Both the position numbers and the translations under genes were made by a program. From the NCBI GenBank assembly GCA_024679065.1, contig JAGIQG010000004.1, positions 63,116,001-63,180,000 of the forward strand: a stretch of 64,000 nucleotides of DNA, given 5' to 3'. Positions 13,137-58,002 of this stretch are shown in pieces. Origin of the DNA: Sphyrna mokarran (taxonomy: Eukaryota). A model generated the notes under the pieces. That model saw nothing but the letters and a program-made list of their open reading frames with translations. It had not been told where the DNA came from and searched no databases. The number at the start of each line of letters is the position of its first letter. Position 1 is the stretch's first letter.

Positions 13137-13191
13137 ATGTTGGCTAGTGTGACAATTCCGTGCATTACTGTTCTCGGAATCATTTTTACAG
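13137..13191 (+). CDS. Gene A exon 1: signal peptide of VJ-C1-TM-ITIM IgSF receptor (MLASVTIPCITVLGIIFT/G)
   Basis: ATG at 13137, hydrophobic leader, phase-1 donor G|GTATCT, 170-nt intron to V exon; paralogous to gene B leader (VLGII shared, same GTATCT donor). Confidence 0.85.
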
Positions 13192-13361
13192 GTATCTGCT
13201 CATATTATGCTTTGTTTTCTCATTTAATCTCATAGTTATGTATCTTTGTTTTGGTGCAGCATGTTTCATTGTCCTTTACAAATATTATCTGAATCCCTTT
13301 CCTCCTTCTCTCCCTCCTGTAATATGATATCATTATTACATTTTTACATTTTTCCCCATAG

Positions 13362-13682
13362 GTCCCGGTGGAACTTCAGTAAGAGTCACTCAGCTCCCTG
13401 AGAGAATAAACGCAAACATCGGTACAAACGTTTCCTTCCATTGTTCGCTTCCTTTCTTTCAAGACGGCCCACGTGTGAATGTAAACTGGTGGAAAAATGG
13501 TGATAATCAATATCTAACGTCCGGACAAAATGATAGAATAATAACTGGATTCAAGACTAAATTCAGCGGCTTCCTTCGGATAATTAATGTGAATGTGCAG
13601 GACACAGGAGTATACTATTGCATTGTCACGCATCAAGGCAAAACAGCTGGAAATGGAACTGGATCTAATTTAACAGTATGGG
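13362..13682 (+). CDS. Gene A exon 2: V-set Ig domain with germline-fused J-like G strand
   Basis: Acceptor ttttccccatag; 321 nt open: (G)PGGTSVRVTQLPERINANIGTNVSFHCSLPFFQDGPRVNVNWWKNGD...FLRIINVNVQDTGVYYCIVTHQGKTAGNGTGSNLTVW. B-strand Cys, C-strand Trp, DTGVYYC, GxGSxLxV; donor G|GTAAGT, phase 1/1. Confidence 0.95.
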
Positions 13683-14574
13683 GTAAGTATAAAAAATATA
13701 AATAATATCCATCTGACTGAAAATTTCAAACTTCAAAACATAAATTTTGATTTAAAGAATTCAACTTTTCAATTAATTTCAACGATCGGTATGTATACAT
13801 CCGACTTTTACTGGTGATTGCTGCGTGCTGATGTATGCTGCAATATTTCAAAATTAATGATAATGGGGAAATTGTCTGCTAAATGTGTGAATACAAAACA
13901 AATGAAGTTAAAATTTCAGTCTTGGATAATTTGCATATCTCGGCATTAAGAGATAGTGTTGAGGAGCTGATAAAGAGAACGCACATTTCTTATCCTATTT
14001 CATGGTGTAATTCGCCAATGTTGATTGCGGAGGGCTTCTATTCGGGTCAACTGTTCCTCTTGTTGATGATTTATTTCTTAAGTTCATATTTCTAACAGTT
14101 GAATTATACATAATTTGAACCAAACCTTCCTCACCTTTCACCCATCATTTTAGCCTCTCGCAAGCGTGAAATCATCCGGGTCCTTGGTGCAAAGTCTAAC
14201 TAATTTGATAAACTAAACTTCCCAGATAGCTTTTAGATTCAATGGAGTGAAATTCACCAGCAGCGGAACCGCAAAACATGCGAACATCCCAAATTACACG
14301 GTGAGCAATGTTCTTCCGAATTAGAAAATTGGGCGAGATTTTTACTGGATACGAAATCGTTTTCACTTGCGTGTTTTTTTTTATTTGTCCTCATGAAAAC
14401 TGTTTAAATTATAAAGGAAATACCTGTGACACGTAATAATGTCGTCAGATTGAATTGCCACTACAGGTAATGCAATCTAAATAGCTTTCTTCCCATTGCT
14501 CCACGCCAGGTTTACGTCCAACAATGGATTGGAACGCATCGTTTAGCTGGTCATCGAAATCAACGGTATTAAGT

Positions 14575-15130
14575 GTAAACGCGTTGGTATCACACTCTGC
14601 TCTCTGAGCAACGAGAATCTTAAGTTCAAATCCCTCACCTCAGCCCCCTCCCCACCTCCGGCCAGGTGTTGAGTAAAAACATCAACTCTGGCACTCCAGA
14701 AATAATACTCCAGCGTCCTGCACTGCCAGAGGGGCAATTATTTGGATGAGTCATTAAGCCTCGGCCCATACTGTTGCTAAAATGGATGCCGAAAATCCCA
14801 TGTCTCGATTTTGAAGAGCAGGGGGGTTATCCACGGTAATCCCCCAGTTATCTCCGGTATCTAGGCTAATAAGTTCCTTCATCAAGATCACGCAAAAGAC
14901 GAATTGATTACGATCGTACTTGATTTGATTTGGTTCATTACTGTTACACGTATTAGCATACAGTGAAAAGTATTATTTCTTGCGTGCACGCTGCTGTTTT
15001 CGGCAATTTCGTATTCACAGGTTTACTGCCAAATGCTCATTATTACAAAAGTGATAGCATTTCAATTCTTCTGCATTGATTGCTGGGCGTTTGAGACGTC
15101 CTGTTGTGTGAAACGCGTTACCTAACTACC
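14575..15130 (+). mobile_element. Decayed DeuSINE-type SINE in gene A intron 2
   Basis: ggcactccag...ctgcactgccagagggg...ttggatgagtcattaagcc...aaatcccatg..gattttgaagagcagggg. Confidence 0.55.
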
Positions 15131-15156
15131 AGTCTTTATATTCTTTATTGTTCTAG

Positions 15157-15468
15157 TTCCACCAACCCCATTGAAAATTAACCCTCAGCAGCTTGAAACG
15201 GATCCAGCTGCACCGTTGACTGTTCTGTGCACCACGTCTCCTTTTTGCCCGAAGAATATTAGTTTCACTTGGTATAAGGATGGCATTATAACTAAAATAG
15301 GAATCAATACCATCATTAAACCCAGCACCAATGGACTCTATGAAGCTTCCAGCCAGTTGCAAGAGGCGCAGCCTTCCCGGTCCGGAACTGTTTATACTTG
15401 CCTGGTCTTTCACAGTGCGCTCCAAATTCCAGCCATAACCACTCACATTGTCAACTATCCAAACACAG
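15157..15468 (+). CDS. Gene A exon 3: C1-set Ig domain
   Basis: Acceptor ttctttattgttctag; 312 nt: VPPTPLKINPQ...LTVLCTTSPFCPKNISFTWYKDG...NGLYEASSQL...VYTCLVFHSALQIP...PNT. C1 signatures CxxxxF(Y/C)P, W, YxCxVxH; donor G|GTAAGG. Confidence 0.95.
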
Positions 15469-15589
15469 GTAAGGTTTCTGATATAATCACATAAATTTAC
15501 AGTTTTGGAAAACTCAGCCTGTCGGTGCAACCTCCTTGAAAGAACTATCAGATCTATTCCGCCGACAGCAGACTGCCACAACCGGCAAA

Positions 15590-16430
15590 TAGAACATAGA
15601 GAACATAGATCATAGAACATTACAGCGCAGAACAGGCCCTTCGGCCTTCGATGTTGCGCCGACCAATTAGGAAAAAGCAATGACCCTCTAACCTAAACCA
15701 TTCCCTTTTCGTCCATAAACGTATCCACTAACCTCTTAAACGCCACCAAACTTGGCGCATCTACAACTGCAGCAGGCAGGGCATTCCATAACCTTACCAC
15801 CGTCTGGGTAAAGAACCTACCTCTGACATCCGTCCTATAACTACCACCCCTTAATTTAAAGCTATGTCCCCTTCTGCTAGCTTTCTCCATCCTAGGAAAA
15901 AGGCTATCACTGTCCACCCTATCTAAACCTCTAATCATCTTATATGTTTCAAAAAGGTCTCCTCTTAGCCGCCTCCTTTCTAACGAAAACAACCTCAAAT
16001 CCCTCAGCCTCTCCTCATAAGACCTGCCCTCCATACCAGGCAACATCCTGGTAAACCTCCTCTGTACCCTATCCAATGCCTCCACATCTTTCTTATAATG
16101 TGGGGACCAGAACTGCACACAATACTCCAAGTGTGGCTGCACTAGAGTTTTGTACAGTTGCAACATGACGTTGCGGCTCCGAAATTCAATCCCCCTACCA
16201 ATAAAAGCTAAGACTCGGTATGCCTTCTTAACAACCTTATCGACTTGATTGCCAACTTTCAGGGATCTATGCACATATACACCAAGATCCCTCTGTTCAT
16301 CAACACTATTAAGAGTTCTACCATTAGCCCTATACTCTACACATTTGTTATTCCTACCAAAGTAAATTACCTCACACTTTTCTGCATTAAACCCCATTTG
16401 CCACCTCTCGGTCCAGCTCTGCAACTTTCC
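15590..16430 (-). mobile_element. Young CR1 3' fragment, antisense in gene A intron 3
   Basis: Uninterrupted 248-aa ORF 15693..16439 (ORF2 C-terminus) plus (ATAGAAC)n tail, about 120 nt after the C1 donor. Confidence 0.92.
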
Positions 16431-17989
16431 AAACATCAATAACTTTCATTTCCAATTGCCTTTTGGAAATAGCTACAAAAATTATTTCCAGCAAATTTTC
16501 AGGCAGTATGTTCTAAATCTTCTCAATCTCCGGTTAACTCTCCCAAAAGCCCATTTATTATTTGCCAATAGTTTTCGATTCAGAACTATTCGTAAGACCC
16601 ACTTTTTGCAGAGCATATTTTCCCCTAATTAATAATTAGCTGTCATAATTTCTTATGTCATAATTTCAGCTGTCATAATTTTGCAAAATTTCCATTAGAT
16701 CTCACCCTAATATTTTTCTATTCTGTTGAAAAGAATCATAGTTTCGAACCTCGCCATGTAGCCAAAGGTCTTTATCCTTGTTAAACATAGAAAATATCCT
16801 TTGTTATTCTCTCCGAGACATTGGCATTATTACTAATATGAATTGTACACTATACATTTATATGTCTTCCATGTATACAATGGTTCTCTCGCATGATTTA
16901 TTATCTAAAAAGCTTCACTGATCAGCATTTCAACTTCTCACCACCATTTGAAAATTTATAGGTATGTCGGAAATTACATTGCCTGAGGCTATCTACGTTG
17001 ATTTAAGCAAAATACACACTTCATAATTATTTGCAATAAATTGCACTTGCCAATTGTAACACTTTATCCTGTTCTATGAAGTACTGAAGTCTGCTGCTGT
17101 TATCTTAATAATGACCAGTGTTGTAGGATTCATAATCTTCAAATTGTACTCCCATATCATGTAAAGAAATAGTCCTAATGTTGAACCCAGAACCAGTCAA
17201 AAACAACAATTTACCACTGTCGTTTATTACCTATAATTTAGCCAATAATATATCTAAAGAACTACTGCTCATCATATCTCAAGTGGTTATTTAAACATAA
17301 TAAAGTGACCCCTCCTCATTTTTATTTTGGTTCACAATACTTATTTTTCTTATTCATTCACAGAATGTGAATGTCATTGCTGTCGCTATATTGGAACAGA
17401 GTGCGTAGAGGCACAAATAGTTCTAGAAATCAAGTTTTCAAGTACTGCTGCCAAAGGTTGTCGGCGCCACCAGCCTTTTCAGTATCCATCAGTTGTTTCT
17501 TGATATTGTGTGAAGTGAACCAATTTGGATCTATATTAGAACCTGTGATACTGAAGAATTCAGGGCGAGCCCAAATAAATCCTTAGGTCAGATAAACGTT
17601 TTTTTCAATCACTCAATCCTAGTATTTTGCACTGAAAATTCTGTCAGTCCTACATAATTGAAAATGGGGAAATGTGTTTATCTCCTTTGTTTATTATTAA
17701 TTGCCACTGCTATTTTCAATGATTGTGGCAGGACTACAGAGATTAAACCTGAGATTTATTTGTTATGGGATCTCTCAGTTGTGTTTATCGTTTGTTTTGT
17801 TTCACTCGTTGATATGTATCTGAAACTAGTTCTTTAGCATCATTGTTGCTTCTGATATTCCTTCCTGCACTCTTAACTGAATGAGGTTTGATCCCTGGGT
17901 TTGATGCCAAGCCTTGATGTTGAATTTAATTCTGTTGTTAATGAAGCATAATACCCTATGGATGATATGTTCTGAGTTTTTTGAGAATT

Positions 17990-19230: not shown

Positions 19231-19581
19231 GGAATGTTTTCTCTTGTAAGTGAGTCCTGCGCTAGGGGAAACAGTTTTAAAATTAGGCGTTGTCCTTTTA
19301 GGACGAAGATTGGGATCTTTATTTTTCTCCTTAAATCATATTAACTCAGAAGGCCATTGAATGTGGATAGATTCTTGTTAGAAAAGAGAATCAAAGGTTA
19401 TCTGGGTAAATGGGAATGTTGACTTCAAAACACAAACGGATCAACCAGAATTAAATTAACGAGTAGGCTTGAGGGGCAAAATGGCCCACGTCTGCTCCTT
19501 TTTCGTATGTCCGTGCCAATACGTAGCCACCTGTATCTTAATACAAATGACTAGAAAGATTGAATGTTTGCTTTGTTTCAG

Positions 19582-19698
19582 AGATTACAGGAGATCAGAA
19601 CACCAAAGTTTTATTGATTTCTGCATTGGTAGGAGGCGGATTCATTCTCCTGACATTAGGTCTCATTGTGAAGCATTGTGTCACGAAGAAAAATAATG
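19582..19698 (+). CDS. Gene A exon 4: stalk + uncharged transmembrane segment
   Basis: Acceptor tttgctttgtttcag; EITGDQNTKVLLISALVGGGFILLTLGLIVKHCVTKKNN; donor G|GTAAGA, phase 1/1; similar length and 3' end to gene B TM exon. Confidence 0.88.
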
Positions 19699-20254
19699 GT
19701 AAGAAAGAATTTCTCCTTTTTACTCATGTAAGCACAACTTTTCAAGAGGGAGGGAGAGCGAGGGGAAAAGTCCTGTTATAGGTGAAGAGGAAGTTGTTTA
19801 CAACTGAACAATGCAAACAATGTCTTGTCGCACAAAAGCAAGGGTGATTGCTGATTATAGCCACTTGTACCAATATTTGGCATACGTGTAATCTTTCACT
19901 GTTGGTTTCATTTATACATATCAGGCAAGAAAGGTCAGTGATCCCCAAAGGCATATCCGCAAATACATAGCAAAAGTCTTGTACACAATATCCTGGGCAC
20001 AACAATAGGCATAAGGTGATATTTTAGGGCATTTGACGAGTGTGACGCACAGCTCCAGGCTCAAAAGACTAATTTTAAAAATGCCCTGAAAGTCAATGAT
20101 TGTCAAGTATCAAAGTTCTACAAAAATGTCTAACCCAACACCAGACATTTGAGAGTCACAAGTAAAACGGCATCATAAGACAATTCAATTTAATGCTATG
20201 AACTACATTTCTTTTTTTTTCAAATTACTTTGTTTCAATTGATTGTAACCTTAA

Positions 20255-22572
20255 TAGGTTGAATAGTTCAGATGGGTGTGCAGGAACATTTCCTGACTCA
20301 ATAAGGCGACAAGAGGTGGGGCCACATTGCACTTGGTACTGAATAATGAACTGGGCCAAATGTTTTATTTATTTGTGGGAGAGCACTTTGGAGATAGTAA
20401 CCACAATTTGATGTCCTTCAATATTGCAATGGAGAGAGATAGAGTCACACGGAAGGGCAAAGTTTATAATTGGGTAGGGGTAATTATGATGCGATTTAGG
20501 CAAGAGTTAGGGAGCATAAGATGGGAACAAAAACTGTCGGGTATGGGCACAAACGAAAAGTGGAGCTTTTTCAAGGAACAAATGCCACATGTCCTTGATA
20601 GATATGTCCCTGGCAGGCAAGGAGGAAATGGCCAAGTAAGGGAACTATGATTCACAAAGGAGGTTGAATGCCTTGTCAAGAAGAAAAAGGATGTAAGGAT
20701 GAAAAAAAAACATCATTTGCGAGTTACAATGTAGTTAGGAATGAATTTTAAATAAAGGGCTTAGGAGAGCTAGGAGAGGGCATAAGAAGTCCGAGGCGGG
20801 TCAGATAAAGGAAAACCCCAAGACTTTTTACCCTTATGTGAGAAATAAAAGAATGACCTGGTTGTGGTTAGGGCCCATCAAGGATAGTAGCAGGAACTTG
20901 TATATGGAGTCAGAAGAGATAGGTAAGACGTTGAATGAATACTTTTCTTTAGTGATCACTAAGAAGAGGTGCCATGATTTTGAGGACGAGTGTATGATAT
21001 AGGCTGATAGGATGGAGGAGTAAATGTTCTGAGGGAAGATGGATTAACAATTTTGAAAAACATGCAGATTGATAAGTCCTCTGGGCCAGATGGGATACAT
21101 CCTAGGATACTTTGAAAGGCAAGGAATGAGATTGCCAAACCTTTAGATTTGATCTTTGGGTTCTCTGCCCACAAGGTTGTGCCGGAGCACTGGAGAGTGG
21201 TGAATGTTTTTACCTCTCTTCAAGAAAGGAAATAGGAATGACTTTGGTAATTGTAGGTCAGTTAGTCTTACTTTGGTGGTCGGTAAATAATGGAAAGCAT
21301 CCTGAGACATAGGATTTATGACCATTTGGAAAGATGCAGTTTAATCTGGGATAGTCAGCACAGTTTTGTGAGGGATAATTCCTGCCTCACAAATTTGATT
21401 GAGAAAGTAACTAAGTGTGTAGTTAAAGGTAAAGCAGTTGATGTTGTATACATGGATTTCTGATAATATTCCCCCGATAGGTGCATGAAGAAAGTAAGGA
21501 GGTGTGGGTTAGAAGGAAATTTGGCCGATTGGATAAGTAACTGCCCCTCCGATAGAGGACAGAGTGTGGTGGTGGAGGAAAAGAAATCTTTTGGAGGCCA
21601 ATTACCAACTGTGTACCATAGGGATTGTTGCTGGGTCCTCTGCTTTTTGTGATTTTTATCAATCAGTTGGTAGAGTGGGCTGAAGGGTGGGTTAGTAAAT
21701 TTGATGATGACACAAGATTGGTGGAGTAGTGGATGAGGTGGAGGATTCTAGTAGGCTTCAAAGAGATGCAGAGCTGGGCAGAAAAGTGGCAGATGGAGTT
21801 TCACCCTGATAAGTGTGAGGCGATTCATTTTGGTAGGACAAACTTGAATGCAGATTACAAGGTCAACAGCAGGGTTCTGAAGAATGTGGAGGAACAGAGA
21901 GATCTTGGGATTCATATCCACAGGTCTCTCTCTCTCTCTGAAGTTGCCACTCAAGTGTATAGAGTCGTGAAGAAGGCTTATAGTGTGTTAGCATTTATTC
22001 ACAGATGATTTGAGTTTAAGAGCCATGGAGTTATGCTGCAAATATACAGGACATTGGTGAGACAACATTTGGAATATTCTGTACAATTCTAGTCACCTCA
22101 CTATAAGAGTGTGGAAACATTGGAGAAAATGCAGAGTAGATTTACCAGGATGCTGCCTGGTTTGGAGAGTAGGTCTTATGAGAAAGGATTGAGGGAGCTG
22201 AGGCTTTTTCTCTCTAGAGCAGAAGAGGATGAGAGGCGACTTGATAGAGTTATATAAGATGATGAGGGGGATAGATAGAGTGGACGTGCAGAGACTATTT
22301 CCTCGGGTGGATGTCGCTTTACCAGGGGCATAACTATAAGGTTCATGATGGGGGATGTAGGAGAGATGTCCGAGGTAGATTCTTTACTCAGGGAGTGGAA
22401 TGCCTGCTGTGATAGTGGTGTTGGACACTTCAGGAACTTTCAAGCTGTTTTGGATAGGCACATGGTCACATCAGAATGAAAGGGAGTGGAATAGGGTTTG
22501 GACATAGCTCGGCACACAATCAAGGGCCGAAGGATCTGTACTATGCTGTACTGTTCTATGTTCCATGTTCTA
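20255..22572 (+). mobile_element. Decayed CR1 LINE in gene A intron 4
   Basis: ORFs 20327..20650 and 21733..22008 with CR1 motifs; many stops; tgttctatgttccatgttc tail. Confidence 0.85.
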
Positions 22573-22627
22573 ATTCATGTAGATACTAAAAATTTCAAAT
22601 GTTGATAGCAAAATATTCACGCAATAT

Positions 22628-23628: not shown

Positions 23629-23672
23629 GTATGCAGAAATTTGGTGAAAGATGTCATTATTCGGAACAGCAG
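23629..23672 (+). CDS. Gene A exon 5 (predicted): short cytoplasmic exon GMQKFGERCHYSEQQ
   Basis: Acceptor ttcctag, strong donor CAG|GTATGT; 44 nt converts phase 1 to phase 0, which is required to join the TM exon to the phase-0 ITIM exon. Confidence 0.6.
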
Positions 23673-29534: not shown

Positions 29535-29636
29535 TTCATTCAGGAAGCTGTCGAAATGTTGCCACCTTATTCTGCACCAGATACGACCAAATCCCGAAAA
29601 ACTCCAAGACATCAAGAACAGACACGGTGCATTCAG
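29535..29636 (+). CDS. Gene A exon 6 (predicted, symmetric phase 0/0): FIQEAVEMLPPYSAPDTTKSRKTPRHQEQTRCIQ
   Basis: Acceptor ttgtctttcag (alternative in-frame acceptor gives start 29544), donor CAG|GTAAGA; 102 nt open; resembles the ITIM module of the terminal exon. Confidence 0.55.
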
Positions 29637-30857: not shown

Positions 30858-31025
30858 AACAAACAAAGACTACCCGATAATAAGCTGACGTACGCTGCTC
30901 TAGATATAATAGGATCAAAGAAAACTTCAAAGCCAAATCATAAGGATAAGAGCACGGAATATGCTCAGCTAAAGATGGAGAAACAAATAGCAGGAGTTGT
31001 CTACACCGAACGGAAAGCCACCTGA
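30858..31025 (+). CDS. Gene A terminal exon: inhibitory tail with ITIM (LTYAAL) and ITSM-like motif (TEYAQL)
   Basis: Acceptor ttgatttcacag; NKQRLPDNKLTYAALDIIGSKKTSKPNHKDKSTEYAQLKMEKQIAGVVYTERKAT*, stop TGA 31023-31025. Not in the ORF track. Motif pair resembles SIRPa/Siglec tails. Confidence 0.85.
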   Translation, partial: NKQRLPDNKLTYAALDIIGSKKTSKPNHKDKSTEYAQLKMEKQIAGVVYTERKAT

Positions 31026-34239: not shown

Positions 34240-34635
34240 TAACAAAGAATAAAACAGCACGGGAAACAGGCCCTTCAGCCCAACGAGCCCGCTCCGCCAT
34301 CTCGATGTTCCCACCTCTACCCGCGATTCCTGTCCATGTTTATAGATCTATGGATTAAAAACCAAATTTGAGACAATTTAGGGAGAATTTGTTTTGCCAA
34401 TTAGCCTATGAGCACATCTTTGGGATGTGGGAGGAAACCGGAGCACCCGGAGAAAACCCACGCAAGCACGGGGAGAATGCGCAAACTCCCACAGACACAG
34501 GCCCAAATCCATGTATCTGCACAACACAGAGATAGTCACTGAGCTGTCGTGTTGTCCATCAAATGGTCCAGATCAAGCGTACACTAACGACGTGAAACAC
34601 TAGGATACTCTCGAAAAAATCCAAGAGCAGCCCTG
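34240..34635 (-). mobile_element. Stand-alone 3' unit of the V-SINE-containing CR1 family (young)
   Basis: Near-identical to 45135-45530 and 63660-64000. Confidence 0.88.
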
Positions 34636-48100: not shown

Positions 48101-50680
48101 GCCTATAATATACTCCTAGCATAGTAATCGCCCCCTTTCTACATAGAACATAGAACATAGAACATTACAGCACAGAACAGGTCCTTTGGCCTTCGATGTT
48201 GCGCCGACCAATATAAAAAGCAATGCCCCTCCAAACTAAACCATTCCCTTCTCTTCCATATACTTATCAAATAACCCCTTAAACGCCACCAAACTTGGCG
48301 CATCTACAACCGCTGCAGGCAGGGCATTCCACTCCCGAACCACCCTTTGGGTAAAGAACCTGCCTCTGATATCCGTCCTATAACTATCACCCCTCAATTT
48401 AAAGCTGTGTCCCCTCGTGCTAGCTTTTTCCATCCTAGGAAAAAGGCTATCACTGTCCACCCTATCTAAACCTCTAATCATCTATATGTTTCGATCAGGT
48501 CCCTCTTAGCCTCCTCCTTTCTAACGAAAACAACCTCAAATCCCTCAGCCTCTCCTCATAAGACCTGCCCTCCATACCAGGCAACATCCTGGGTAAACCT
48601 CCTCTGTACCCTCTCCAATGCCTCCACATCTTTCTTATAATGTGGGGACCAGAACTGCACACAATACTCCAAGTGCGGCCGCACTAGAGTTTTGTACAGT
48701 TGCAACATGACGTTGCGGCTCCGAAATTCAATCCCTCTACCAATAAAAGCCAAGACTCCATATGCCTTCCTAACAACCTTCTCGACCTGACTGCCTACTT
48801 TCAGGGATCTATGCACATACACACCAAGATCCCTCTGTTCATCTAGACTACTAAGAATCCTACCATTTGCCCTTTCTATTCCTCAACTCCACCCACAGCG
48901 ACTCCACTCCTACCTCCCCTGTATTGTCCTCCGTCTGCACCACCGTGATGCTCTCCTTAACTAACAACGCCAGTCCTCCACCTCTTCTGGACTCTCCTCT
49001 GTCACGCCTGAAACACTTATACCCAGGAATGTTCAGTTGCACTGCTCCCTTCCTCTAACCATGTCTCCGTCACCGCAACCACATCCAAGTTCCTTGCAAA
49101 CATTAAGGCCCTAAGTTCATCCGTTTTTCCCATTCCGCTCCTCTCATTGAAACAGATACACTCCAGACCTCCAAGACCACTTGGAACCTCCTTCTGCCCG
49201 GTGCATCTCTTCTCATCCAAGCTTACTCTTTCTCCCATCTCGCTCTCTACCGAGCTATCGGTCTCAGCCCCTCCCCCCCTCCATATTAGTTTAAATCCTG
49301 CCGAAATACTCCAGCTAACCTCCCAGCTAAGATATTCATGCCCTTCCCATTCAAGTGTTCCCCGTACCTTCTACACAGCTGCCCTTCTTTCACAAAGACT
49401 TCCCAGTTATCCACAAATACGAAACCCTCTGCCCTACACCAGTCCTTCAGCCACTCATTCAGCTGTAGGATCTCATTTCTCCTGGTTCTGCTATTACCCG
49501 CACCTGGAAGCAGACCTGAGATCGCCACCTTCAAGGCCCTGCTCTTCAGCCTACCCCCCAACTCGCTGAACTGCTTCGTATATCCTCCCTGCACTTCCTT
49601 CCTACATCCTTCTCTCATACGTGAATAATCATATCCGCCTGGGCCCCTCACCCTTCAAAATGCCCTCTACCCGTCCGACGCATCTTGCACCACTGCTCCA
49701 GGGAGGCAGACTACCATCCTGGAGTCCCACCTTGGAGCACAGAAGCGTCTATCTATTCCTTTAACCCTCCCATCCCCCACCACTATCTTCCTTTTAGCCC
49801 CTTTCCTCCCTTTTGAGGTATTCTGGTCCTCGTGCCTTGCCTTTTTTAACCTTCCGCCCTCGATATTTTGGGGGGGCTGCACTGGGACGTCTTTGGACTG
49901 TCTCCCCTCTCCTTTTCCCTTCCTGACAGTAATCCACCTCTAAGGGTCAGGGTCAGGGTCTCCCCCCACCCCCACCCATCCCACCTCCCCCCCCACCCCC
50001 CACCTTAGGCTCCGGGTCCACCACCTTACTCTGCCTTTCTTCCGTGATTGCCTCGTTCTCCCTGACTAAAAATGCATCTTCCAATCGGCGCTCTAGTTGC
50101 TAGAGCCCTCAGATGCTGCAGCTCCAAACACGACGCATACATGGACTTTTGGGAGAGGTCTTGCCTCGAGGAACTCCCACATATGGCACCATACACAGGT
50201 GAGGCATCTTCCCTTAATCCCTGCCATTGTCATGAACACCTCTGGAGGTGTGAATTCCAATGGAAAAACCAGTAGCACACTGCGCCTAAGCCTGCTCTCC
50301 CCTGAGCCCTGCGAGCCAAAGCCCTTATATCTCTCACTCTGCTTCCCTACTCACTCCCCTGCCCGCTCCAACGCTGCCCGCTGTCTACTGCCACTTTCTT
50401 TTTATAATCCCCAGTTTCCTTCCCAGCTAGCCCCAGGACTAACTACAGCAGCAAAAAGCATTCAAAAAGAAAGAGAGAAAAAAACAATTTGAAAAATTCA
50501 CACACAGCCACCAGCACTTCCAAACACTCTGTCCCAGAGAACAATGAGGTGGGTTGCTGATTTATACTCCCCACTCCCTTCCCAGCTAGCCCCAGGACTA
50601 ACTACAGCAGCATAAAGCGCTCAAAAAGAGAGAGAAAAAAAAAAGCAAATTGAAAAATTCACACTCAGCCACCAGCAGGG
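45135..50680 (-). mobile_element. Near full-length CR1 LINE (5' UTR, ORF1 with Cys motif and SGNH-esterase, ORF2 EN-RT, long 3' UTR); inactive
   Basis: ORF1 pieces 50093..50278 (CVWCHMWE), 49667..49882 (IVVGD..VKGIDRRFC...VCLPGA), 49286..49651; ORF2 pieces 49017..49238, 48860..49042, 46410..48158 (582 aa), 46015..46266, 45830..46123. Confidence 0.93.
48142..48869 (-). mobile_element. Young CR1 3' fragment nested in the ORF2 of the full-length CR1
   Basis: TSD CCCTTTCTA at 48133-48141 and 48870-48878; host frame ELRNRKG|AITMLGVYYRPPNS is split here. Confidence 0.92.
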
Positions 50681-51830: not shown

Positions 51831-52128
51831 CAACATCCCCTCTCCCTGCCCACCATTACCCTTCCCCCCCCCATCCCCCAACAACACCACCGTCCCTCCC
51901 CCGCCCCCACCATGACTTTCTTAACAGGGATATCTGTGCTTTCATGATATATTTTCTGAGAACCTGTCCCTCGCAAACAATAATGCCGAAAGGAGAGAGG
52001 GAAGGCATGATGGGGTAAAGGTGGCGGGAGGCGGGGGCTGGCACGTGGGGATGGGGTGGGGAAGATGTTGTATTTGCACGGAACTCATTTTTTTCGCAAA
52101 CCCTGCGACCTTCTGTTATTGACATTGC

Positions 52129-52243
52129 GGCCCCGCCTATTCTATTCGCATTTAACCACGCGTTCCACCTAATTTATTGAAATCAGTCAACTTTCTGTCA
52201 AACTTCCGCTTTCCAAATGCTCTGTCATTGACGTTACAAACAA
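52129..52243 (+). promoter_or_regulatory. Putative proximal promoter of gene B (GC box, ETS-like ACTTCCGC, TGACGTT, TTACAAACAA)
   Basis: GGCCCCGCC near 52129, ACTTCCGC 52202-52209, TGACGTT 52229-52235, TTACAAACAA 52234-52243. Confidence 0.4.
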
Positions 52244-52423
52244 CGAAAAAGAAAATAAATTAACTTGAGCTGACCGTCCCTATTAAAGTCGTATTCACAA
52301 ATCACCTCGTAAAATAGATCTCGATATTTCATGCAACAGCTCGCAACGTCATCTATCAAAACGGTTTGTCAACGAAACATTTGCAGACTAACAGAGGTGC
52401 ACCTCATCAATAAGCTTTGAACA

Positions 52424-52469
52424 ATGTTTGCGTGTCAGTGCATATGGGTCCTAGGAATTATTTACGAAG
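52424..52469 (+). CDS. Gene B exon 1: signal peptide (MFACQCIWVLGIIYE/V)
   Basis: ATG 52424, phase-1 donor G|GTATCT, homologous to gene A leader; short intron to V exon. Confidence 0.82.
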
Positions 52470-52685
52470 GTATCTTCCACAACAAATTGTTTTCTCATTT
52501 AGAATCTTTTAATCTTGCTTTCTTTTTCATCGTGTGTCCGCCTATATTCCGCCTACATATCTTTCTATGTATCTATCTATCTTTTTATCTATCTATCTAG
52601 CTATGCATCTGTTTCTCTCCCTATCTGTTTACGTTTAACGTACAATTTATTCATATGTAACAACTACATTTTAAATGTTTTATAG

Positions 52686-52997
52686 TTGCTTCCACATGGG
52701 TGTCGCAATTGCCTGAAAGCACCATTTTGATGGCGGGTTCAGATATTACGTTCCACTGTACAGCGAATTCTGTCCAGATTCATTCAGATGTGGATGTTTA
52801 TTGGTGGAAACTTGGCGATGAAACATTTTTACAACCGAATTCTGATGACAGAAAGCGATTCTTTCCTTTTAAAAGCGGAGCGACTTCCTTCCAGATCCTG
52901 AATGTCCGTGTCTCCGACTCCGGATTCTATTACTGCGGAGTGCGAGACGCAGGTAGCAGGATCCTCAATGGAACTGGATCCAGACTTGTTGTGCACG
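52686..52997 (+). CDS. Gene B exon 2: V-set domain with germline-fused J-like strand
   Basis: Acceptor tgttttatag; VASTWVSQLPESTILMAGSDITFHCTANS...VYWWKLGD...FQILNVRVSDSGFYYCGVRDAGSRILNGTGSRLVVH; donor G|GTAAGA; 312 nt. Confidence 0.95.
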
Positions 52998-54128
52998 GTA
53001 AGAGACATGGAACATCTGCTGTTGTACGATGCTATACAGAAGATCAGAGGCAGTTTTGATTAAACAGGGAGATTAACAGGGCAAATTTGTGGGGTTATAA
53101 GGATACGTCGGTGGAGGGATTTTTCTTGGTGCAGACTCGATGGGCCGAATGGCCTCCTTCAGCCCTGTAGGATTCTATAATTCTGTAATCAGTGAATTTA
53201 TTTCTAATGTTAATTTGTGGAAGTCGGGCCTATCACAATATCACAATCCGCATCCATTGTTTGTTATGCATCTATATTCTACATGTTTACCTGTTTTAGT
53301 GCAGGGTTCCAATGCATTATTTAGATGAGGGATTTTACCTAAAAATGCCTATGTGGCAAAAAGAACCTTGATTGACTGACGATATGGATAGACAACAAAA
53401 CATTTTTGTTACGAGGGTTTGTTTTTCACAATTTTATTTCAGAATCCTCAGGTTTGATACTCCTGTGGCACCACCTTCAAAAATTATAAAGCAAAATTAC
53501 TCAAACTGATCGGTATATGAAACCGATCAGTTCGCTACCGATTGAAATTAATTAGAGGGCAAGATTATAAAAAAATGCTGATACCAATGGCGCCTTTCTC
53601 ATCCGGGGTGTTTGACACATTTAGGTTAAACCTTTAAGTAACATGAATTCGAGTAAATTTCAGGTAACTGGAAACACAGCCCCATTCTGATCATGTTTGG
53701 AAATTAGATTTGATACTCACTTGGAATATGAGTGTGGAATCCAATCTGTGGATTTAACAGCGCCACTTCGCGTGGTCAGAACAGATCTATAGTTAATTTT
53801 GCTTCAAGTTAGGATTGAAACAAAAACCTGCATTGTTCGCTCCCCCTTCCTCCCCCCCCCCCCACCCGCCCTCTCCCCCCGCCCCCAAACGCCTTCGCAG
53901 CTCCACGGTTCATCCCTTCAAACGTTTGTTGTTGCCAAATTTGCAGCAATTTCCAATTTTTCACCTTTAAAGTATTGAACCAATTATGATTCAGCTTATC
54001 ATGAGACCAATGTATCACTTGGCCGTAATAATATTTCCCCTTGCTACAGAAATAGAAATCTTAACTCAATCAATTTCAAATAATATTGTTCACATGAGTT
54101 TTGTTTATTTACACGGTGCATAATCATA

Positions 54129-56550
54129 GAACATAGAACATAGAACATTACAGCACAGAACAGGCCCTTCGGCCTTCGATGTTGTGCCGACCAAAATAAA
54201 AAGCAATGCCCCTCCAAACTAAACCATTCCCTTCTCTTCCATATACTTATCAATTAACCTCTTAAACGCCACCAAACTTGGCGCATCTACAACAGCTGCA
54301 GGCAGGGCATTCCACTCCCTAATCACTCTTTGAGTAAAGAACCTACCTCTGATATCCGTCCTATAACTCATACCCCTTAATTTAAAGCTGTGTCCCTCGT
54401 GCTAGCTTTCTCCATCCTAGGAAAAAGGCTATCGCTGTCCACCCTATCTAAACCTCTAATCATCTTATATGCTTCAATAAGATCCCCTCTTAGCCGCCTC
54501 CTTTCTAACAAAAACAACCTCAAATCCTTCAACCTCTCTTCATAGGACCTGCCCTCCATACCAGGCAACATCCTGGTAAACCTCCTCTGTACCCTCTCCA
54601 ATGCCTCCACATCTTTCTTATAATGTGGGGACCAGAACTGCACACAATACTCCAAGTGCGGCCGCACTAGAGTTTTGTACAGTTGCAACATGATGCTGCG
54701 GCTCCTAAATTCAATCCCCCTACCAATAAAAGCTAAGACTCCATATGCCTTCTTAACAACTTTATCCACTTGACTGCCTACTTTCAGGGATCTATTGACA
54801 CATACACCAAGATCCTTCTGTTCCTCAACACTATTAAGAGCCCTACCATTAGCCCTATACTCTACACATTTATTGTTCCTGCCAAAGTGCATTACCTCAC
54901 ACTTTTCCACATTAAACTCCATTTGCCACCTCTCGGCCCAGCTCTGCAACTTGTCCAAGTCACTCTGTAAACTATAACACCCCTCTTCACTATCTACCAC
55001 TCCACCGACTTTAGTGTCATCTGCAAATTTACTGATCCATCCCTCAATACCCTCATCCAGATCATTTATAAAAATTACAAACAGCAGGGGCCCCAAAACA
55101 GACCCCTGAGGTACACCACTTGTCACCGAACTCCACGATGAATATCTCCCATCAACCACCACCCTCTGTCTTCTATCTGCCAGCCAATTCCTAATCCAAT
55201 TAGCTAAATCACCCTCTATTCCACACATCTGCATTTTCTGTAGAAGTCTTCCATGGGCCACCTTATCAAACGCCTTACTAAAGTCCATATATACTACATC
55301 AACCGCCTTACCCCCATCCACCTCTTTGGTCACTTTCTCAAAAAACTCAATAGGTTAGTAAGGCATGACCTACCCTTCACGAAACCATGCTGACTATCCC
55401 CAATCAATTCATTTCTCTCTAAATAACTATAAATCCTATCCCTAATAATTCTCTCCAATACTTTGCCCACAACAGAAGTAAGACTCACTGGCCTATAATT
55501 CCCTGGAAGGTCTCTCTTCCCCTTCTTAAACAATGGGACCACATTCGCTATCCTCCAGTCCTCCGGAACCACACCCATAACCAACGAGGACCTGAAGATC
55601 AGAGCCAGAGGCTCTGCAATCTCCTCGCTTGCCTCCCAGAGAATCCTAGGGTAAATCCCGTCCGGCCCAGGGGACTTATCCAACTTCAAACCCTCGAGAA
55701 TTTCTAGCACATCCTCCCTATCTACTACAATACTTCCCAATTTGCAACCCTGTACCTCAGTGTTCTCCATAGCTACATTTCCAGCACTCTGCGTGAATAC
55801 CGAAGAGAAATATTTATTCAGTGCCTCACCAATCTCTTCAGGCTCCACGCACAACTTCCCACTGCTGTCTATGACTGGCCCTAATCTTGCCCTAACCAAT
55901 CTTCTATTCTTAACATATCGAAAGAAAGCTTTAGGATTCTCCTTAATCCTATCAGCCAACATCTTCTCGTGTCCCCTCTTAGCTCTCCTCAATTCACTTT
56001 TTACCTCCTTCCTGGCTAATCTATAGCTATCCATTGCACTAACTGAGCCTTCAAGCCTCATCCTGACATAAGCCTCCTTTTTCTTCTTAACCAGCAAATC
56101 AACTTTTTTCGTACACCAAGGCTCTCTTACTCGACCATTTCCTCCCTGCCTGACAGGGACATACTTATCAAGGACTCGCAGCAGCTGCTCCTTGAATAAG
56201 CACCACATTCCAGATGTTCCCAGTCCCTGTAGTTTCCTAGTCCAATCTATGCACCCTAATTCTCTCCTGATGGCCTCATAATTACCCTTCCCCCAGCTAT
56301 AACTACAGCCCCCAGCTTCATGCCTATCCCTGTCCATCACTAAGGTGAACGTAACCGAATTGTGGTCACTATCACCAAAATGTTCACTAACTTCCAAGCC
56401 TAACACCTGGTCTGGCTCATTGCCCAGCACCAAATCCAATGTAGCCTCACCTCTAGTTGGCCTATCTACATACTGGGTCAAAAAACCTTCCTGCACACTC
56501 TGTACAAAAACTGACCCCTCTAACGAGCTAGAGCTATAGCTATTCCAATC
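54129..56550 (-). mobile_element. Young CR1 (2.4 kb, 5'-truncated), antisense in gene B intron 2
   Basis: ORFs 55330..56688 and 54377..55333 separated by one frameshift; TSD AATCATA at 54122-54128 and 56551-56557. Confidence 0.93.
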
Positions 56551-56932
56551 AATCATAATGATGAAATACTTCTGAATAGATATGAAAAAGTACTCCTTTG
56601 TTTTTCTATTTGAAATTTGGTATTTTTCCCTTTGCCCAGATGAGTGCAAAATACGAAGCTTCCACAGCATGCTTCTTTCTACAGGCAATATTTATTTGCA
56701 AGACCAAAACCAACCTGAATGTCTTGCGCATTATTTTCTGCTGGTATTATAACATTGTTCATCAGTGTTCGCATATTAATTTAGAATTAGTAATGAGAAT
56801 TTAAGATTGTCGTGATTTAGTTTGGTTCCTGTGACTAAAAACCATTTGATCATAGCCAGGAACACTGGATCTTAATGGAAAATAAGGTACACAAATAGAA
56901 ACAATCAATGTTTTCATTTCGCTGTTCCACAG

Positions 56933-57241
56933 CTTCCCCAGAACCCATAAGACTGATCCCCAAGGTTTTCCGTACCAACTCATCTACTCGAACACTTGTA
57001 TGTGAAACGGCTGAGTTCTACCCAGAGTCTCTCACCTTCATTTGGTATAGAAACGACAGCAACATTGTGACTGGAATCAGCACCATTCAAACGGTGAACG
57101 CAGAGGGAGAGTATAAAGCTTCCAGTAGTTTGGAAATGGCAGATCCAGCCCAGAGCGGTATTGTGTATACCTGTGTGGTGTCTCACCTCACACTGCAGTA
57201 TCCAATCATGGCTATTTACTTGGACTCCATTTCTAATTCAG
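56933..57241 (+). CDS. Gene B exon 3: C1-set Ig domain
   Basis: Acceptor gctgttccacag; ASPEPIRLIPK...TLVCETAEFYPESLTFIWYRND...EGEYKASSSL...VYTCVVSHLTLQYP...SNS; donor G|GTAAGA; 309 nt. Confidence 0.95.
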
Positions 57242-57888
57242 GTAAGATGCCAATCTTTGCACAGATATGGTCGGTAACCGTTTGCTATGTATCCACATTT
57301 ATGTCGTTCAATCCTCTGAACTTAATTACGTTCTTTTAAAGACTGGTTCGTCTTAGAGGTTTGTAAAGCGAATGAAAGTGGGAAAGAGAGCAATCTATTA
57401 CAGATATTATTCATTACCAAATTTCACTCAGATTCAATGAGTTGCCCTTTAACGCAAAACAAAGAAAGACATGGAACGTCTTTTCACTCATGACTTTAGA
57501 ATTTCCTCGTTATGACAAGCTGCTGATACCCTTGTATGGATATTCCGCTTTATAAGACACTCACCTGCACTCATGTGCCTATAATTATCGATATGTTGTG
57601 CCTACCTGTAAAATTCACCTCAATGGAGATGCAAACGATAAATGTGTATTGATTCAATACGAACAGGAAATGTAGTCACTTGATTGTGAAGTCAGAATCA
57701 ATAATAGTACTAGGTCATACGAGTTAGAAGTCTTCTGCTCAGTTACTGAAAAATATTTGCAATATATTTTTTTCCATAGACTGACTGCGTATCACTTCCT
57801 TCGACGGGAAAATTATATTTGGCTATTCATATTAATAGCAATAATTATATTACGTTCGCTGTTTTCACTATCATTATCATTTTCACAG

Positions 57889-58002
57889 ACCCTGGCCACA
57901 CTTCCATTTATCTACAGATTTCTATATATGCAGAAGTTGTATTGATATTTCTAGCCCTGAGCGCTTTCATTATGAAGAGCTACCAACACCGCAAGTGTAA
58001 TG
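57889..58002 (+). CDS. Gene B exon 4: stalk + transmembrane segment containing Glu; downstream exons unresolved
   Basis: Acceptor tcattttcacag; DPGHTSIYLQISIYAEVVLIFLALSAFIMKSYQHRKCN; donor G|GTAAGG. Confidence 0.85.

What the first reader, a model, noticed from the sequence alone, without database searches (positions are those of the whole stretch)
13137..58002. Tandem cluster of non-rearranging, antigen-receptor-like VJ-C1-TM receptor genes in a cartilaginous fish
Seen: two same-strand paralogues about 39 kb apart share the exon plan leader / V+J in one exon / single C1 / TM, with phase-1 introns and intact frames, and no RSS splits V from J. Established: V+J+C1 is the plan of TCR and Ig light chains. 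C1-set domains are largely restricted to Ig, TCR, MHC, b2m, tapasin and SIRP-type molecules. Germline-joined VJ or VJ-C1 genes (SIRPs, NKp30, chicken PRARP, Xenopus VJC1, shark UrIg) are discussed as relics of the pre-RAG receptor. Inference: this is a diversified multigene family of innate receptors with TCR-chain-like ectodomains. The two V domains keep framework motifs (QLPE, FHC, VxWWKxGD, DxGxYYC, NGTGSxLxV) but differ strongly in the loops. Whether the family is already described cannot be judged without a search.
Basis: partly seen in the sequence, partly recalled or inferred. Interest (0 to 1): 0.88.

Follow-up and report, generated by a model that had tools for sequence, protein, structure and literature searches.

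The report
Shark VJ-C1 inhibitory-type receptor gene pair
Two neighbouring, intact shark genes encode antibody-chain-like surface receptors that need no gene rearrangement; they belong to a large receptor family found across sharks, rays and chimaeras that public databases hold only under automatic names.

Summary
Two same-strand paralogues (start codons 39.3 kb apart) each have a split leader, a one-exon V+J-like domain, one C1-set exon and a TM exon. All splice sites are canonical, introns are phase 1, and no RSS is present.

Two, perhaps three, cytoplasmic exons end at 31025 with an ITIM (LTYAAL) and an ITSM-like TEYAQL 23 residues apart. Gene B has a short tail without a motif, and its acidic TM residue is not conserved.

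Both belong to a family named in 20 chondrichthyan species. Every source name seen is automatic: SIRP-alpha-like, Ig-lambda-like, tapasin-related-like, B7H6-like. A and B are separate lineages that predate the shark-ray split.

The family is not UrIg, canonical NKp30, three-domain SIRP, NITR or germline-joined IgL/TCR. It works most like SIRP-type paired receptors. PRARP could not be tested.

No paper describing it was found, but the key shark NCR3, PRARP and UrIg papers were not held. RNA evidence, MHC linkage and a structure model could not be obtained. The scan noted similar clusters elsewhere in this genome.

The parts
13137..13191 (+). Gene A leader exon (split leader, 55 nt, phase-1 donor)
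   Evidence: ATG and the donor CAG|gtatct were read.
13362..13682 (+). Gene A VJ exon (V-set domain with the J-like NGTGSNLTV, 321 nt)
   Evidence: (V-set 35.3 bits). It is 78% identical to the Scyliorhinus canicula protein P0151/P0004. No RSS was found.
15157..15468 (+). Gene A C1-set exon (312 nt)
   Evidence: (C1-set 37.0 bits). It is 71% identical to P0004.
19582..19698 (+). Gene A connecting peptide/TM exon (117 nt, phase-1 donor). Read-through would stop at 19779-19781.
   Evidence: tblastn with P0036 gave 64% identity at 19587-19700.
23629..23672 (+). Gene A candidate linking cytoplasmic exon (44 nt, phase 1 to 0). Weakly supported.
   Evidence: It scored 19.0, eighth in the sorted list of 63 AG..GT candidates and the best match to the Heterodontus linker. 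The five higher-scoring candidates at 21556-22306 were not examined further. It has the same length as the Heterodontus P0190 linker and shares G.... GER at the same positions. Its splice sites are strong.
29535..29636 (+). Gene A cytoplasmic exon 2 (102 nt, phase 0 to 0). Its first tyrosine-motif pair is decayed (PPYSAP, TRCIQ).
   Evidence: tblastn with the P0036 tail gave 37% identity, E 0.049. Splice sites were read.
30858..31025 (+). Gene A terminal exon. It carries LTYAAL (ITIM), then TEYAQL (ITSM-like) 23 residues later, then VVYTER and the stop.
Evidence: It is 79-80% identical to the tail of the A-lineage Heterodontus protein P0036, against 41-54% for tails of other lineages.
52424..52469 (+). 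Gene B leader exon (46 nt, phase-1 donor)
52686..52997 (+). Gene B VJ exon (312 nt, J-like NGTGSRLVV)
   Evidence: (V-set 35.5 bits). It is 89% identical to the Mustelus asterias protein P0180.
56933..57241 (+). Gene B C1-set exon (309 nt)
   Evidence: (C1-set 45.2 bits). It is 89% identical to P0180.
57889..58049 (+). Gene B TM exon. There is a donor-like GT at 58003. Read-through gives a 14-residue extension and a stop at 58047-58049, as in the Mustelus model.
   Evidence: P0180 aligns at 70% identity over 57846-58043, including the read-through part. Tails of the B lineage are short throughout.
54377..56688 (-). LINE (reverse transcriptase) inside gene B intron 2. It is not part of the gene and is listed because it took all the mapped reads.

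Best explanation
These are two adjacent, apparently intact members of a chondrichthyan-wide multigene family of germline-encoded (non-rearranging) type I receptors. The plan is split leader, VJ-type V domain, a single C1-set domain, TM, then a variable tail.

Shown: the exon plans, the domain types, the family and the antiquity of the two lineages.

Inferred for gene A: it is a long-tailed, inhibitory member. Its V domain binds an unknown ligand. Src-family kinases then phosphorylate the tail tyrosines LTYAAL and TEYAQL, which lie 23 residues apart. That spacing suits the tandem SH2 domains of SHP-1/SHP-2, which would damp activation, as in SIRP-alpha.

Inferred for gene B: it is a short-tailed member with no tyrosine motif and no conserved charged TM residue. 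It cannot signal alone. It would act like SIRP-gamma (adhesion, decoy or competitor) or as a partner chain.

The family as a whole has the make-up of a paired-receptor family. It holds ITIM/ITSM tails, short tails, and a subgroup with an arginine at the outer end of the TM.
For: Anatomy and domain assignments.

Family: a profile of the two V exons against 1.84 billion representatives gave 1326 hits at E <= 1e-3. Many of these are 220-450 aa proteins with the same V-C1-TM-tail plan.
- All 46 of 46 hits to P0026 are chondrichthyan.
- 38 of 40 hits to a 36-sequence family profile are chondrichthyan. E-values then jump from 1e-36 to 1e-11 for two teleost FcRL/CD22-like proteins.

Trees: in the V tree the 120 family V domains form a clade (SH-aLRT 99) apart from 18 frog, turtle, squamate, sturgeon and pIgR-like V domains.
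- Gene A sits in a clade of 9 (C1 tree, support 97) and 10 (V tree, support 95) rows that hold sharks and batoids.
- Gene B sits in a clade of 8 (support 98) and 11 (support 99) rows.

Tail: the terminal exon matches the A-lineage Heterodontus tail at 79-80%. The 23-residue Y-to-Y spacing recurs across the family.

Family tails: of 105 V+C1 proteins with distinct tails, 82 have a predicted TM. Of those 82, 36 carry an ITIM/ITSM, 26 have short tails without a motif and 20 have long tails without a motif.

SIRP comparison: the alpha/beta/gamma logic and D1-only splice forms are described in passages of PMC12975943. C1-less isoforms exist in this family too. SIRP-alpha (2wng) aligns over V plus the first C1 in one stretch, 114.8 bits.
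Against: - There is no transcript evidence. The four runs laid on 52300-58299 covered only the intronic LINE and gave zero depth on all gene B exons. No run held half of the stretch's words.
- The exon joining gene A's TM exon to its tail is only a weak candidate.
- Gene A's first tyrosine-motif pair is decayed.
- The two Scyliorhinus isoforms seen (X2 and X3) of the gene A orthologue lack a TM.
- Ligand, expressing cell type and SHP recruitment are all untested.
- By sequence the ectodomain is no closer to SIRP than to Ig heavy chains or UrIg2.
Confidence: 0.72

Rival explanations
1. The genes are true cartilaginous-fish orthologues of the SIRP family (SIRP-alpha-like and SIRP-gamma-like) that have one C1 domain fewer.
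For: The commonest automatic name in the family is 'tyrosine-protein phosphatase non-receptor type substrate 1-like'. SIRP-alpha and SIRP-gamma are the best non-Ig, non-UrIg structures for the family profile, at 114.8 and 102.4 bits. The long-tail, short-tail and V-only forms mirror the SIRP family. From recall only, the tail module Y-A-x-L...K-K...T-E-Y-A resembles the SIRP-alpha tail.
Against: Each gene has one C1 exon, not two. IgA1 heavy chain (140.5 bits) and UrIg2 (132 bits) score higher than SIRP-alpha, although multi-domain chains add up their scores. No SIRP V domain is among the best 60 structures for the V exon or the V profile. A 2026 survey groups the SIRP family under Tetrapoda (passage of PMC13262535). 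No tetrapod SIRP sequence was in hand for a tree.
Confidence: 0.15
2. They are members of the shark NCR3 (NKp30) family, already described by Kinlein et al. 2021, in a form that keeps a C1 domain.
For: The V-only isoform of a Pristis family gene is auto-named 'natural cytotoxicity triggering receptor 3-like', while its full isoform is named SIRP-alpha-like. A frog protein named NCR3 is among the nearest non-chondrichthyan V domains, with HH probability 96.4 and 32% identity. Nurse shark has eight deposited NCR3 genes (accession list in PMC12227049). C1-less V-TM-ITIM members exist.
Against: Both window genes have a C1 exon and no basic TM residue. Human NKp30 is not among the best 60 solved structures. 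A sturgeon 'SIRP-beta-like' V domain scores the same as the frog NCR3. No author-given NCR3 name appeared in the 30 clusters looked up or in the hit tables. PMC12227049 calls NCR3 a 'VJ domain gene' and roots its C-domain tree with MHC and tapasin C1 domains (Fig. 4 legend), which suggests, but does not show, that it treats NCR3 as lacking a C domain. The Kinlein paper could not be read.
Confidence: 0.12
3. A and B are the two chains of a heterodimeric innate receptor, like TCR or PRARP-A/B. One chain carries the signalling tail and the other is tail-less.
For: The two lineages are adjacent here and both predate the shark-ray split. Scyliorhinus canicula, Heterodontus and Leucoraja each have members of both lineages. 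In Scyliorhinus and Heterodontus the two lie on one record. C1-set domains are normally found paired in cis (passage of PMC2785349). V and C1 clades are congruent, so each chain evolves as a unit.
Against: There is no conserved membrane-proximal cysteine and there are no complementary TM charges. FR2 reads WWK and the J-like motif starts with N in an N-x-T sequon, instead of the residues recalled for the Ig/TCR V-V interface.
Confidence: 0.12
4. They are B7-family/B7H6-like ligands (V-C1-TM) rather than receptors.
For: Several family members are auto-named 'NCR3 ligand 1-like', 'CD276 homolog' or 'butyrophilin-like'. The nearest ESM Atlas clusters are C1-set/CD80-like/butyrophilin-like and OX-2-like, scoring 0.90-0.93.
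Against: The G strand has the J-type G-x-G-S-x-L-x-V motif. The ITIM/ITSM pairs are typical of receptors. No B7H6 chain is among the best 60 structures for either C1 exon or for the family profile. CD276 appears for the V profile only, at 47.7 bits.
Confidence: 0.05
5. One or both genes are unexpressed or decaying copies in a birth-and-death cluster.
For: There is no RNA support. Gene A's first motif pair is decayed and its linker exon is uncertain. Gene A's C1 has an odd third cysteine. LINEs fill the introns.
Against: All eight core exons are open with canonical splice sites. Both genes have conserved orthologues across sharks and rays, at 46-89% identity.
Confidence: 0.1

Closest known systems
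SIRP family (SIRP-alpha/beta/gamma; SHPS-1/PTPNS1)
   Same: Both are germline V domains with a J-like G strand followed by C1-set domains. Both include an inhibitory member with ITIM tyrosines, a member with a very short tail, and V-only splice forms. It is the commonest automatic name for the family.
   Different: This family has one C1 domain instead of two. It is restricted to Chondrichthyes in my searches. No orthology was shown, the ligand is unknown, and gene B has no basic TM residue of the SIRP-beta type.
UrIg / UrIg2 (non-rearranging shark 'antibodies'; PDB 9dmx)
   Same: Both are chondrichthyan, have a one-exon VJ with a split leader and carry C1-set domains. UrIg2 is the top solved structure for both C1 exons.
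   Different: Nurse shark UrIg2 has nine C domains and the epaulette shark model eleven. UrIg also has several (three N-terminal C domains are compared). Here there is one. Per-domain matches reach only 16.8-21.3 bits. No ITIM occurs anywhere in the text of PMC12227049.
[quoted passage not shown] 2019)
   Same: Both are non-rearranging IgSF genes discussed as VJ-type remnants. The title was seen in the reference list of PMC10751288. The V-C1-TM plan and the linked gene pair are recalled, not seen.
   Different: No comparison was possible. The paper is not in the library and no PRARP sequence was in hand.
NKp30 / NCR3, including the shark NCR3 family
   Same: Both have a VJ-type V domain that does not rearrange. 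V-only family isoforms are auto-named NCR3-like.
   Different: The window genes have a C1 exon, no basic TM residue and an ITIM tail. Human NKp30 is not among the best 60 structural matches.
NITRs of bony fish
   Same: Both are diversified multigene families of VJ-type receptors. Most NITR members are inhibitory with ITIMs and a minority are activating (abstract of PMC2442602).
   Different: NITRs have one or two Ig domains and no C1-set domain is reported for them in that abstract. They are found in bony fish only.

Membership tests
SIRP family | [quoted passage not shown] | tested here: not met
   Each gene has one C1 exon, and no further C1 locus lies in the window. Of the relatives read, only Amblyraja P0025 has two C1 domains, and they are near-identical.
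SIRP family | An inhibitory member with cytoplasmic ITIM tyrosines, and another member with a very short tail | tested here: met
   Gene A carries LTYAAL and TEYAQL. Gene B and its orthologues have short tails without a motif. Only the motifs were tested, not SHP binding.
SIRP family | Closer in sequence to SIRPs than to other V-C1 proteins, or orthology | tested here: inconclusive
   SIRP-alpha scores 114.8 bits, against 140.5 for IgA1 heavy chain and 132 for UrIg2. No tetrapod SIRP sequence was available for a tree.
SIRP family | Binding of CD47 | not testable with these tools
   This needs a binding assay.
NKp30 / NCR3 | A single VJ-type V domain with no C domain (recalled; PMC12227049 calls it a 'VJ domain gene') | tested here: not met
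   A C1-set exon is present in both genes.
NKp30 / NCR3 | A basic TM residue for ITAM adaptors (recalled) | tested here: not met
   Neither the gene A nor the gene B TM has a K or R in its core.
NKp30 / NCR3 | MHC linkage | not testable with these tools
UrIg / UrIg2 | A VJ exon with split leader, followed by several C1-type domains | tested here: not met
   The split leader and VJ exon are present, but there is only one C1 exon.
UrIg / UrIg2 | V and C domains cluster with UrIg | tested here: inconclusive
   9dmx is the top hit for both C1 exons but reaches only 16.8-21.3 bits per domain. It is absent from the best 60 for the V exon.
PRARP | Sequence relationship to chicken PRARP-A/B | not tested
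   No sequence was in hand and the paper was not among those found or held.
NITR | A V domain, or V plus a second Ig domain that is not C1-set, in a bony-fish family (abstract) | tested here: not met
   The second domain is C1-set, above Pfam's cut-off. All close relatives are chondrichthyan.
Germline-joined IgL / TCR chain | A V gene of the Ig/TCR clans, either with an RSS or joined in the germline to a bona fide J and C | tested here: not met
   No RSS is present. Ig light chains match the V exon at only about 30-32 bits. The genes carry a TM and an ITIM tail. Their V domains form their own clade, although no Ig or TCR V domain was in that tree.
B7 / B7H6 | A V domain without a J-type G strand, plus a C domain, acting as a ligand (recalled) | tested here: inconclusive
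   The J-type motif is present. B7H6 is not among the best 60 structures. Atlas neighbours are B7/butyrophilin-like.

The most novel reading that the evidence does not exclude
The A and B lineages are an ancient, linked pair of single-C1, membrane-bound VJ-C1 chain genes, retained since before sharks and rays split. They would encode the two chains of an innate heterodimeric receptor, one chain bearing the ITIM/ITSM tail. This would be a living model of a TCR-shaped, pre-RAG-type receptor, distinct from UrIg/UrIg2 and NCR3.
Probability: 0.1. Interest if true: 0.85.

Novelty: new member of a known kind. Interest (0 to 1): 0.55.

Why it matters
Debate on the origin of antigen receptors rests on a few non-rearranging VJ or VJ-C1 genes: SIRP, NKp30, PRARP, UrIg and UrIg2. 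In the sections and term searches I made of the 2025 UrIg2 paper, only UrIg/UrIg2 and NCR3 are discussed as non-rearranging shark genes. The terms SIRP, ITIM and PRARP do not occur in its main text.

A large, old family with the TCR/IgL-like plan of one V and one C1 on a membrane anchor would add a third class of such genes in the oldest jawed vertebrates. The family spans chimaeras, sharks and rays and carries SIRP-type inhibitory tails. It would also give cartilaginous fish a candidate paired-receptor system comparable to SIRP, NITR or KIR.

The value is tempered. The genes are already in RefSeq as predicted models. This window holds just two of many copies. I could not read the papers most likely to have named the family.

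Tried and rejected
RNA evidence. The look-up of sequencing runs listed 12 runs, none holding half of the words. Read laying of X1, X2, X3 and X6 on 52300-58299 covered only the LINE at about 54.1-56.7 kb and two short spots. Depth on every gene B exon was zero. This says nothing about expression.

Outgroups for trees. The search for homologous proteins with the C1 region of P0026 gave 9 hits of 63 candidates, all within the family. No SIRP, TCR, IgL, B7H6, PRARP, UrIg or shark NCR3 sequence could therefore be put in a tree.

Solved-structure searches with single exons and profiles show only the best 60 chains and are dominated by antibodies and multi-Ig proteins. They could not rank SIRP against NKp30 against B7H6. 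hhalign of the V profile against a frog 'NCR3' and a sturgeon 'SIRP-beta-like' protein gave the same score. The ESM Atlas gave only generic V-C neighbours.

Linkage to the MHC was not testable. Chromosome sizes alone were judged too weak to use.

The activating-partner reading of gene B's TM glutamate is rejected. The residue is G, T or A in the orthologues aligned.

Germline-joined IgL/TCR is rejected.

The search for gene A's linking exon gave only a weak candidate. Five candidates in LINE-rich sequence scored higher against other family linkers and were not pursued.

Literature. Ten searches found no paper describing this family. One search was badly designed and uninformative. Supplements were not asked for. 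The supplementary files cited in PMC10751288 (S6, S8) and the supplementary table S1 and figs S1-S2 of PMC12227049 may list such genes.


Full report
THE OBSERVATION. I read both loci base by base and checked the arithmetic.

Gene A has a 55-nt leader exon (13137-13191), a 321-nt VJ exon (13362-13682), a 312-nt C1 exon (15157-15468) and a 117-nt connecting-peptide/TM exon (19582-19698). Gene B has the same plan: 52424-52469, 52686-52997, 56933-57241 and 57889-58002. All acceptors are AG and all donors GT. All introns between these exons are phase 1, and the frames are open. The two start codons are 39.3 kb apart on the same strand.

tblastn of the four exon translations against the window finds only the reciprocal copy (E about 1e-19). 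The next best hit has E 0.096. tblastn with the stored relatives of up to 600 aa (189 proteins held) finds no further V or C1 locus.

Pfam gives V-set at 35.3 and 35.5 bits (cut-off 26), with Ig_3 slightly higher. It gives C1-set at 37.0 and 45.2 bits (cut-off 21). The V exons are 41% identical and the C1 exons 35%.

The V exon runs without interruption from the end of the signal peptide through YYC to a J-type G strand (G-x-G-S-x-L-x-V, preceded by N). No RSS heptamer or heptamer-spacer-nonamer pattern lies in either V exon. The rest of the window is LINE sequence on both strands.

Both TM exons end in a phase-1 GT.

It reads NKQRLPDNKLTYAALDIIGSKKTSKPNHKDKSTEYAQLKMEKQIAGVVYTERKAT-stop. That gives a canonical ITIM (LTYAAL), an ITSM-like TEYAQL 23 residues later, and a third tyrosine.

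This exon is 79-80% identical to the tail of Heterodontus P0036/P0190. That protein falls in gene A's own lineage in both trees. Tails of other lineages match at only 41-54%. So the exon belongs to gene A.

A 102-nt exon at 29535-29636, with good splice sites and phase 0 at both ends, aligns with the preceding part of the Heterodontus tail (37% identity, E 0.049). Its tyrosine motifs are decayed in the window, and partly decayed in Heterodontus too.

A phase 1-to-0 linking exon is still required. A candidate at 23629-23672 has strong splice sites, the same length as the Heterodontus linker and a shared GER at the same position. The match is weak: it scored 19.0 and ranked eighth among 63 candidates, behind five in LINE-rich sequence at 21556-22306 that I did not examine further.

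With it, the model has 372 codons plus the stop.

GENE B. Its Mustelus asterias orthologue, P0180, is 89% identical in both V and C1. That RefSeq model reads through the GT at 58003 to a stop 15 codons on. The window keeps that frame open to 58047-58049.

Eight B-lineage proteins were aligned, from Mustelus, Scyliorhinus, Heterodontus (three), Heptranchias, Pristis and Leucoraja. All have short tails without tyrosine motifs and without a conserved charged TM residue. The glutamate in the window's TM is G, T or A in the others.

THE FAMILY. A profile of the two V exons, searched against 1.84 billion representative proteins, gave 1326 hits at E <= 1e-3, 242 at <= 1e-10 and 13 at <= 1e-30.

Apart from giant multi-Ig proteins, whose many domains add up their scores, the best hits are proteins of 220-450 aa with the same plan. 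Many carry two to five repeats of a tail module with Y-A-x-L and T-x-Y-A motifs about 23 residues apart.

Names were looked up for 30 clusters and shown in three hit tables. The named family members come from 20 species:
- Sharks: Scyliorhinus canicula and S. torazame, Mustelus, Heterodontus, Heptranchias, Carcharodon, Cetorhinus, two Chiloscyllium species, Hemiscyllium and Pristiophorus.
- Batoids: Amblyraja, Leucoraja, Hemitrygon, Hypanus, two Mobula species, Pristis and Narcine.
- The chimaera Callorhinchus milii.

Every name is automatic and they disagree with one another: SIRP-alpha-like (the commonest), SIRP-beta-like, Ig lambda-1-like, tapasin-related-like, NCR3-ligand-1-like, CD276 homolog, MHC class II beta-like, butyrophilin-like, or uncharacterized. 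No author-given name was seen.

All 46 of 46 hits to P0026 are chondrichthyan. So are 38 of 40 hits to a 36-sequence family profile, after which E-values fall from 1e-36 to 1e-11 for two teleost FcRL/CD22-like proteins. Those searches need shared 5-residue words, so distant relatives could be missed.

Many members share one large record per species. At least 20 protein clusters lie on the 99.65-Mb Heterodontus record, with isoforms not separated. The Scyliorhinus canicula orthologues of A (P0004) and B (P0203) lie on the same 198.79-Mb record.

The scan's own notes list further VJ-C1 clusters on other pieces of this genome. I did not check them.

TREES. I extracted V and C1 domains with HMMs built from the window's exons. 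Proteins over 800 aa and partial domain matches (fewer than 70 HMM positions) were left out, and identical domains were merged. I then built separate quick IQ-TREE trees.

- C1 tree (108 rows). Gene A lies in a 9-row clade (SH-aLRT 97) with Scyliorhinus, Heterodontus, Amblyraja, Leucoraja, Hemitrygon and Mobula. Gene B lies in an 8-row clade (support 98) with Mustelus, Scyliorhinus, Heterodontus, Heptranchias, Pristis and Leucoraja.
- V tree (138 rows). The same two groups recur (10 rows at support 95, and 11 rows at support 99). The 120 family V domains form one clade (support 99), apart from 18 V domains of frog 'NCR3', turtle and squamate multi-V receptors, a sturgeon 'SIRP-beta-like' protein and pIgR-like proteins.

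So A and B are distinct lineages older than the shark-batoid split, and V and C1 have stayed together in each. The trees are short-alignment quick trees rooted at the midpoint. About a third of the rows have no species label. No Ig, TCR, SIRP, UrIg, PRARP or B7 reference was available.

Within each lineage, V and C1 diverge at similar rates. Mean pairwise identity is 60.8% (V) against 63.3% (C1) in lineage A, and 62.2% against 69.6% in lineage B, over 28 pairs each. Across 118 family V domains, variability peaks in the three CDR-like stretches (outgroups and long branches dropped).

WHAT IT IS NOT.
- UrIg/UrIg2. The solved UrIg2 fragment (9dmx) is the best PDB match for both C1 exons, but only because three weak domain matches (16.8-21.3 bits) add up. 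UrIg genes have several to eleven C domains and a different biology (sections 7, 13 and 16 of PMC12227049).
- Canonical NKp30. A C1 exon is present, the TM has no basic residue, and human NKp30 is not among the best 60 structures.
- SIRP in the strict sense. The genes have one C1 domain, not two. SIRP-alpha (114.8 bits, V plus first C1 in one stretch) scores below IgA1 heavy chain (140.5) and UrIg2 (132) with the family profile.
- NITR. The second domain here is C1-set.
- Germline-joined IgL/TCR.
- B7H6-like. This identity is unlikely but not excluded.
- PRARP. It could not be tested.

HOW IT MOST LIKELY WORKS (inference). The family has the composition of a paired-receptor family. Of those 82, 36 carry at least one ITIM/ITSM, 26 have short tails without a motif and 20 have long tails without one.

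A short-tailed subgroup has an arginine at the outer end of the TM. Examples are P0013, P0168, P0188 and P0139, with P0033 and P0208 read by eye. C1-less isoforms or members exist as well.

This parallels SIRP-alpha (ITIMs recruit SHP-1/SHP-2), SIRP-beta (basic TM residue and DAP12), SIRP-gamma (very short tail) and the D1-only SIRP variants (passages of PMC12975943).

Gene A would be an inhibitory receptor signalling through its terminal tyrosine pair. Gene B would be a non-signalling binder or a partner chain.

C1-set domains are normally paired in cis (passage of PMC2785349), so homo- or heterodimers are plausible. However, the conserved N-x-T sequon at the start of the J-like motif and the WWK framework argue, from recalled knowledge of V-V interfaces, against an antibody-type V-V pairing.

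WHAT COULD NOT BE DONE.
- Transcript support.
- Reading Kinlein 2021, Flajnik 2012 and 2023, Ohta 2015 and 2019. These were not held. Fu 2019 was not among the papers found.

Ten literature searches found no description of the family. In the main text of the 2025 UrIg2 paper the terms SIRP, ITIM and PRARP do not occur. A 2026 survey groups the SIRP family under Tetrapoda (passage). The claim 'not in print' rests on these searches alone.

VERDICT. It is one two-gene sample of a large, old chondrichthyan VJ-C1-TM family that exists in databases only under automatic names.

I file it as a new member of a known kind: non-rearranging VJ-C1 receptors of the SIRP/PRARP sort, organised like paired inhibitory and non-signalling receptors. 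Interest is moderate to fairly high for comparative immunology.

Noticed in passing
window 7513-8106(-), 15693-16439(-), 46410-48158(-), 54377-56688(-), 61668-62660(+): Several LINE copies lie on both strands, inside the introns and between the genes. Four of the five ORFs were scanned and carry reverse-transcriptase domains, and 46410-48158 also carries an endonuclease domain. The 15693-16439 ORF was called a LINE from its similarity to the 54377-55333 ORF and was not scanned. The LINE in gene B's intron is the only part of 52300-58299 covered by public runs.
   Followed up: partly
window 13652-13660 and 52967-52975; family alignment A3: The J-like motif begins with a nearly invariant Asn in N-G-T. 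This is an N-glycosylation sequon at the position where Ig/TCR J segments have F or W (the latter is recalled).
   Followed up: partly
stored proteins P0013, P0033, P0168, P0208, P0188, P0139: A short-tailed subgroup of the family has Arg near the outer end of the TM ([P/H]-R-F-[I/V]-L), and most have D/E-H at the inner end. These are candidate activating members. Neither window gene belongs to the subgroup.
   Followed up: partly
stored proteins P0097, P0105, P0027, P0091, P0081: There are V-TM-ITIM forms without the C1 domain. Some share their tails with V-C1 forms (P0097 with P0090, P0105 with P0093). The Pristis V-only isoform is auto-named NCR3-like, while its full isoform is named SIRP-alpha-like.
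   Followed up: partly
window 15241-15243 (gene A C1 exon): Gene A has a third cysteine in its C1 domain (F-C-P where the family has F-Y-P). The Scyliorhinus orthologue does not share it.
   Followed up: no
window 1461-1529(-), 34427-34477(+), 63846-63902(+): A repeat in the window matches the C-terminal peptide of the Scyliorhinus isoform X3 (P0004). This suggests that the isoform ends in a repeat-derived exon. Isoform X2 (P0151) continues past the end of the C1 domain with no TM, a form resembling read-through of the C1 donor.
   Followed up: no
stored protein P0025 (Amblyraja radiata): This A-lineage member is modelled with two near-identical C1 domains (V-C1-C1). It is either a recent exon duplication or a model or assembly artefact.
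   Followed up: no
window 19699-19781: Read-through of gene A's TM-exon donor gives a 27-residue tail without a motif before a stop. Short-tailed A-lineage models in Heterodontus (P0199) and Leucoraja (P0019) end in a similar way. One gene may therefore make both long and short tails.
   Followed up: no
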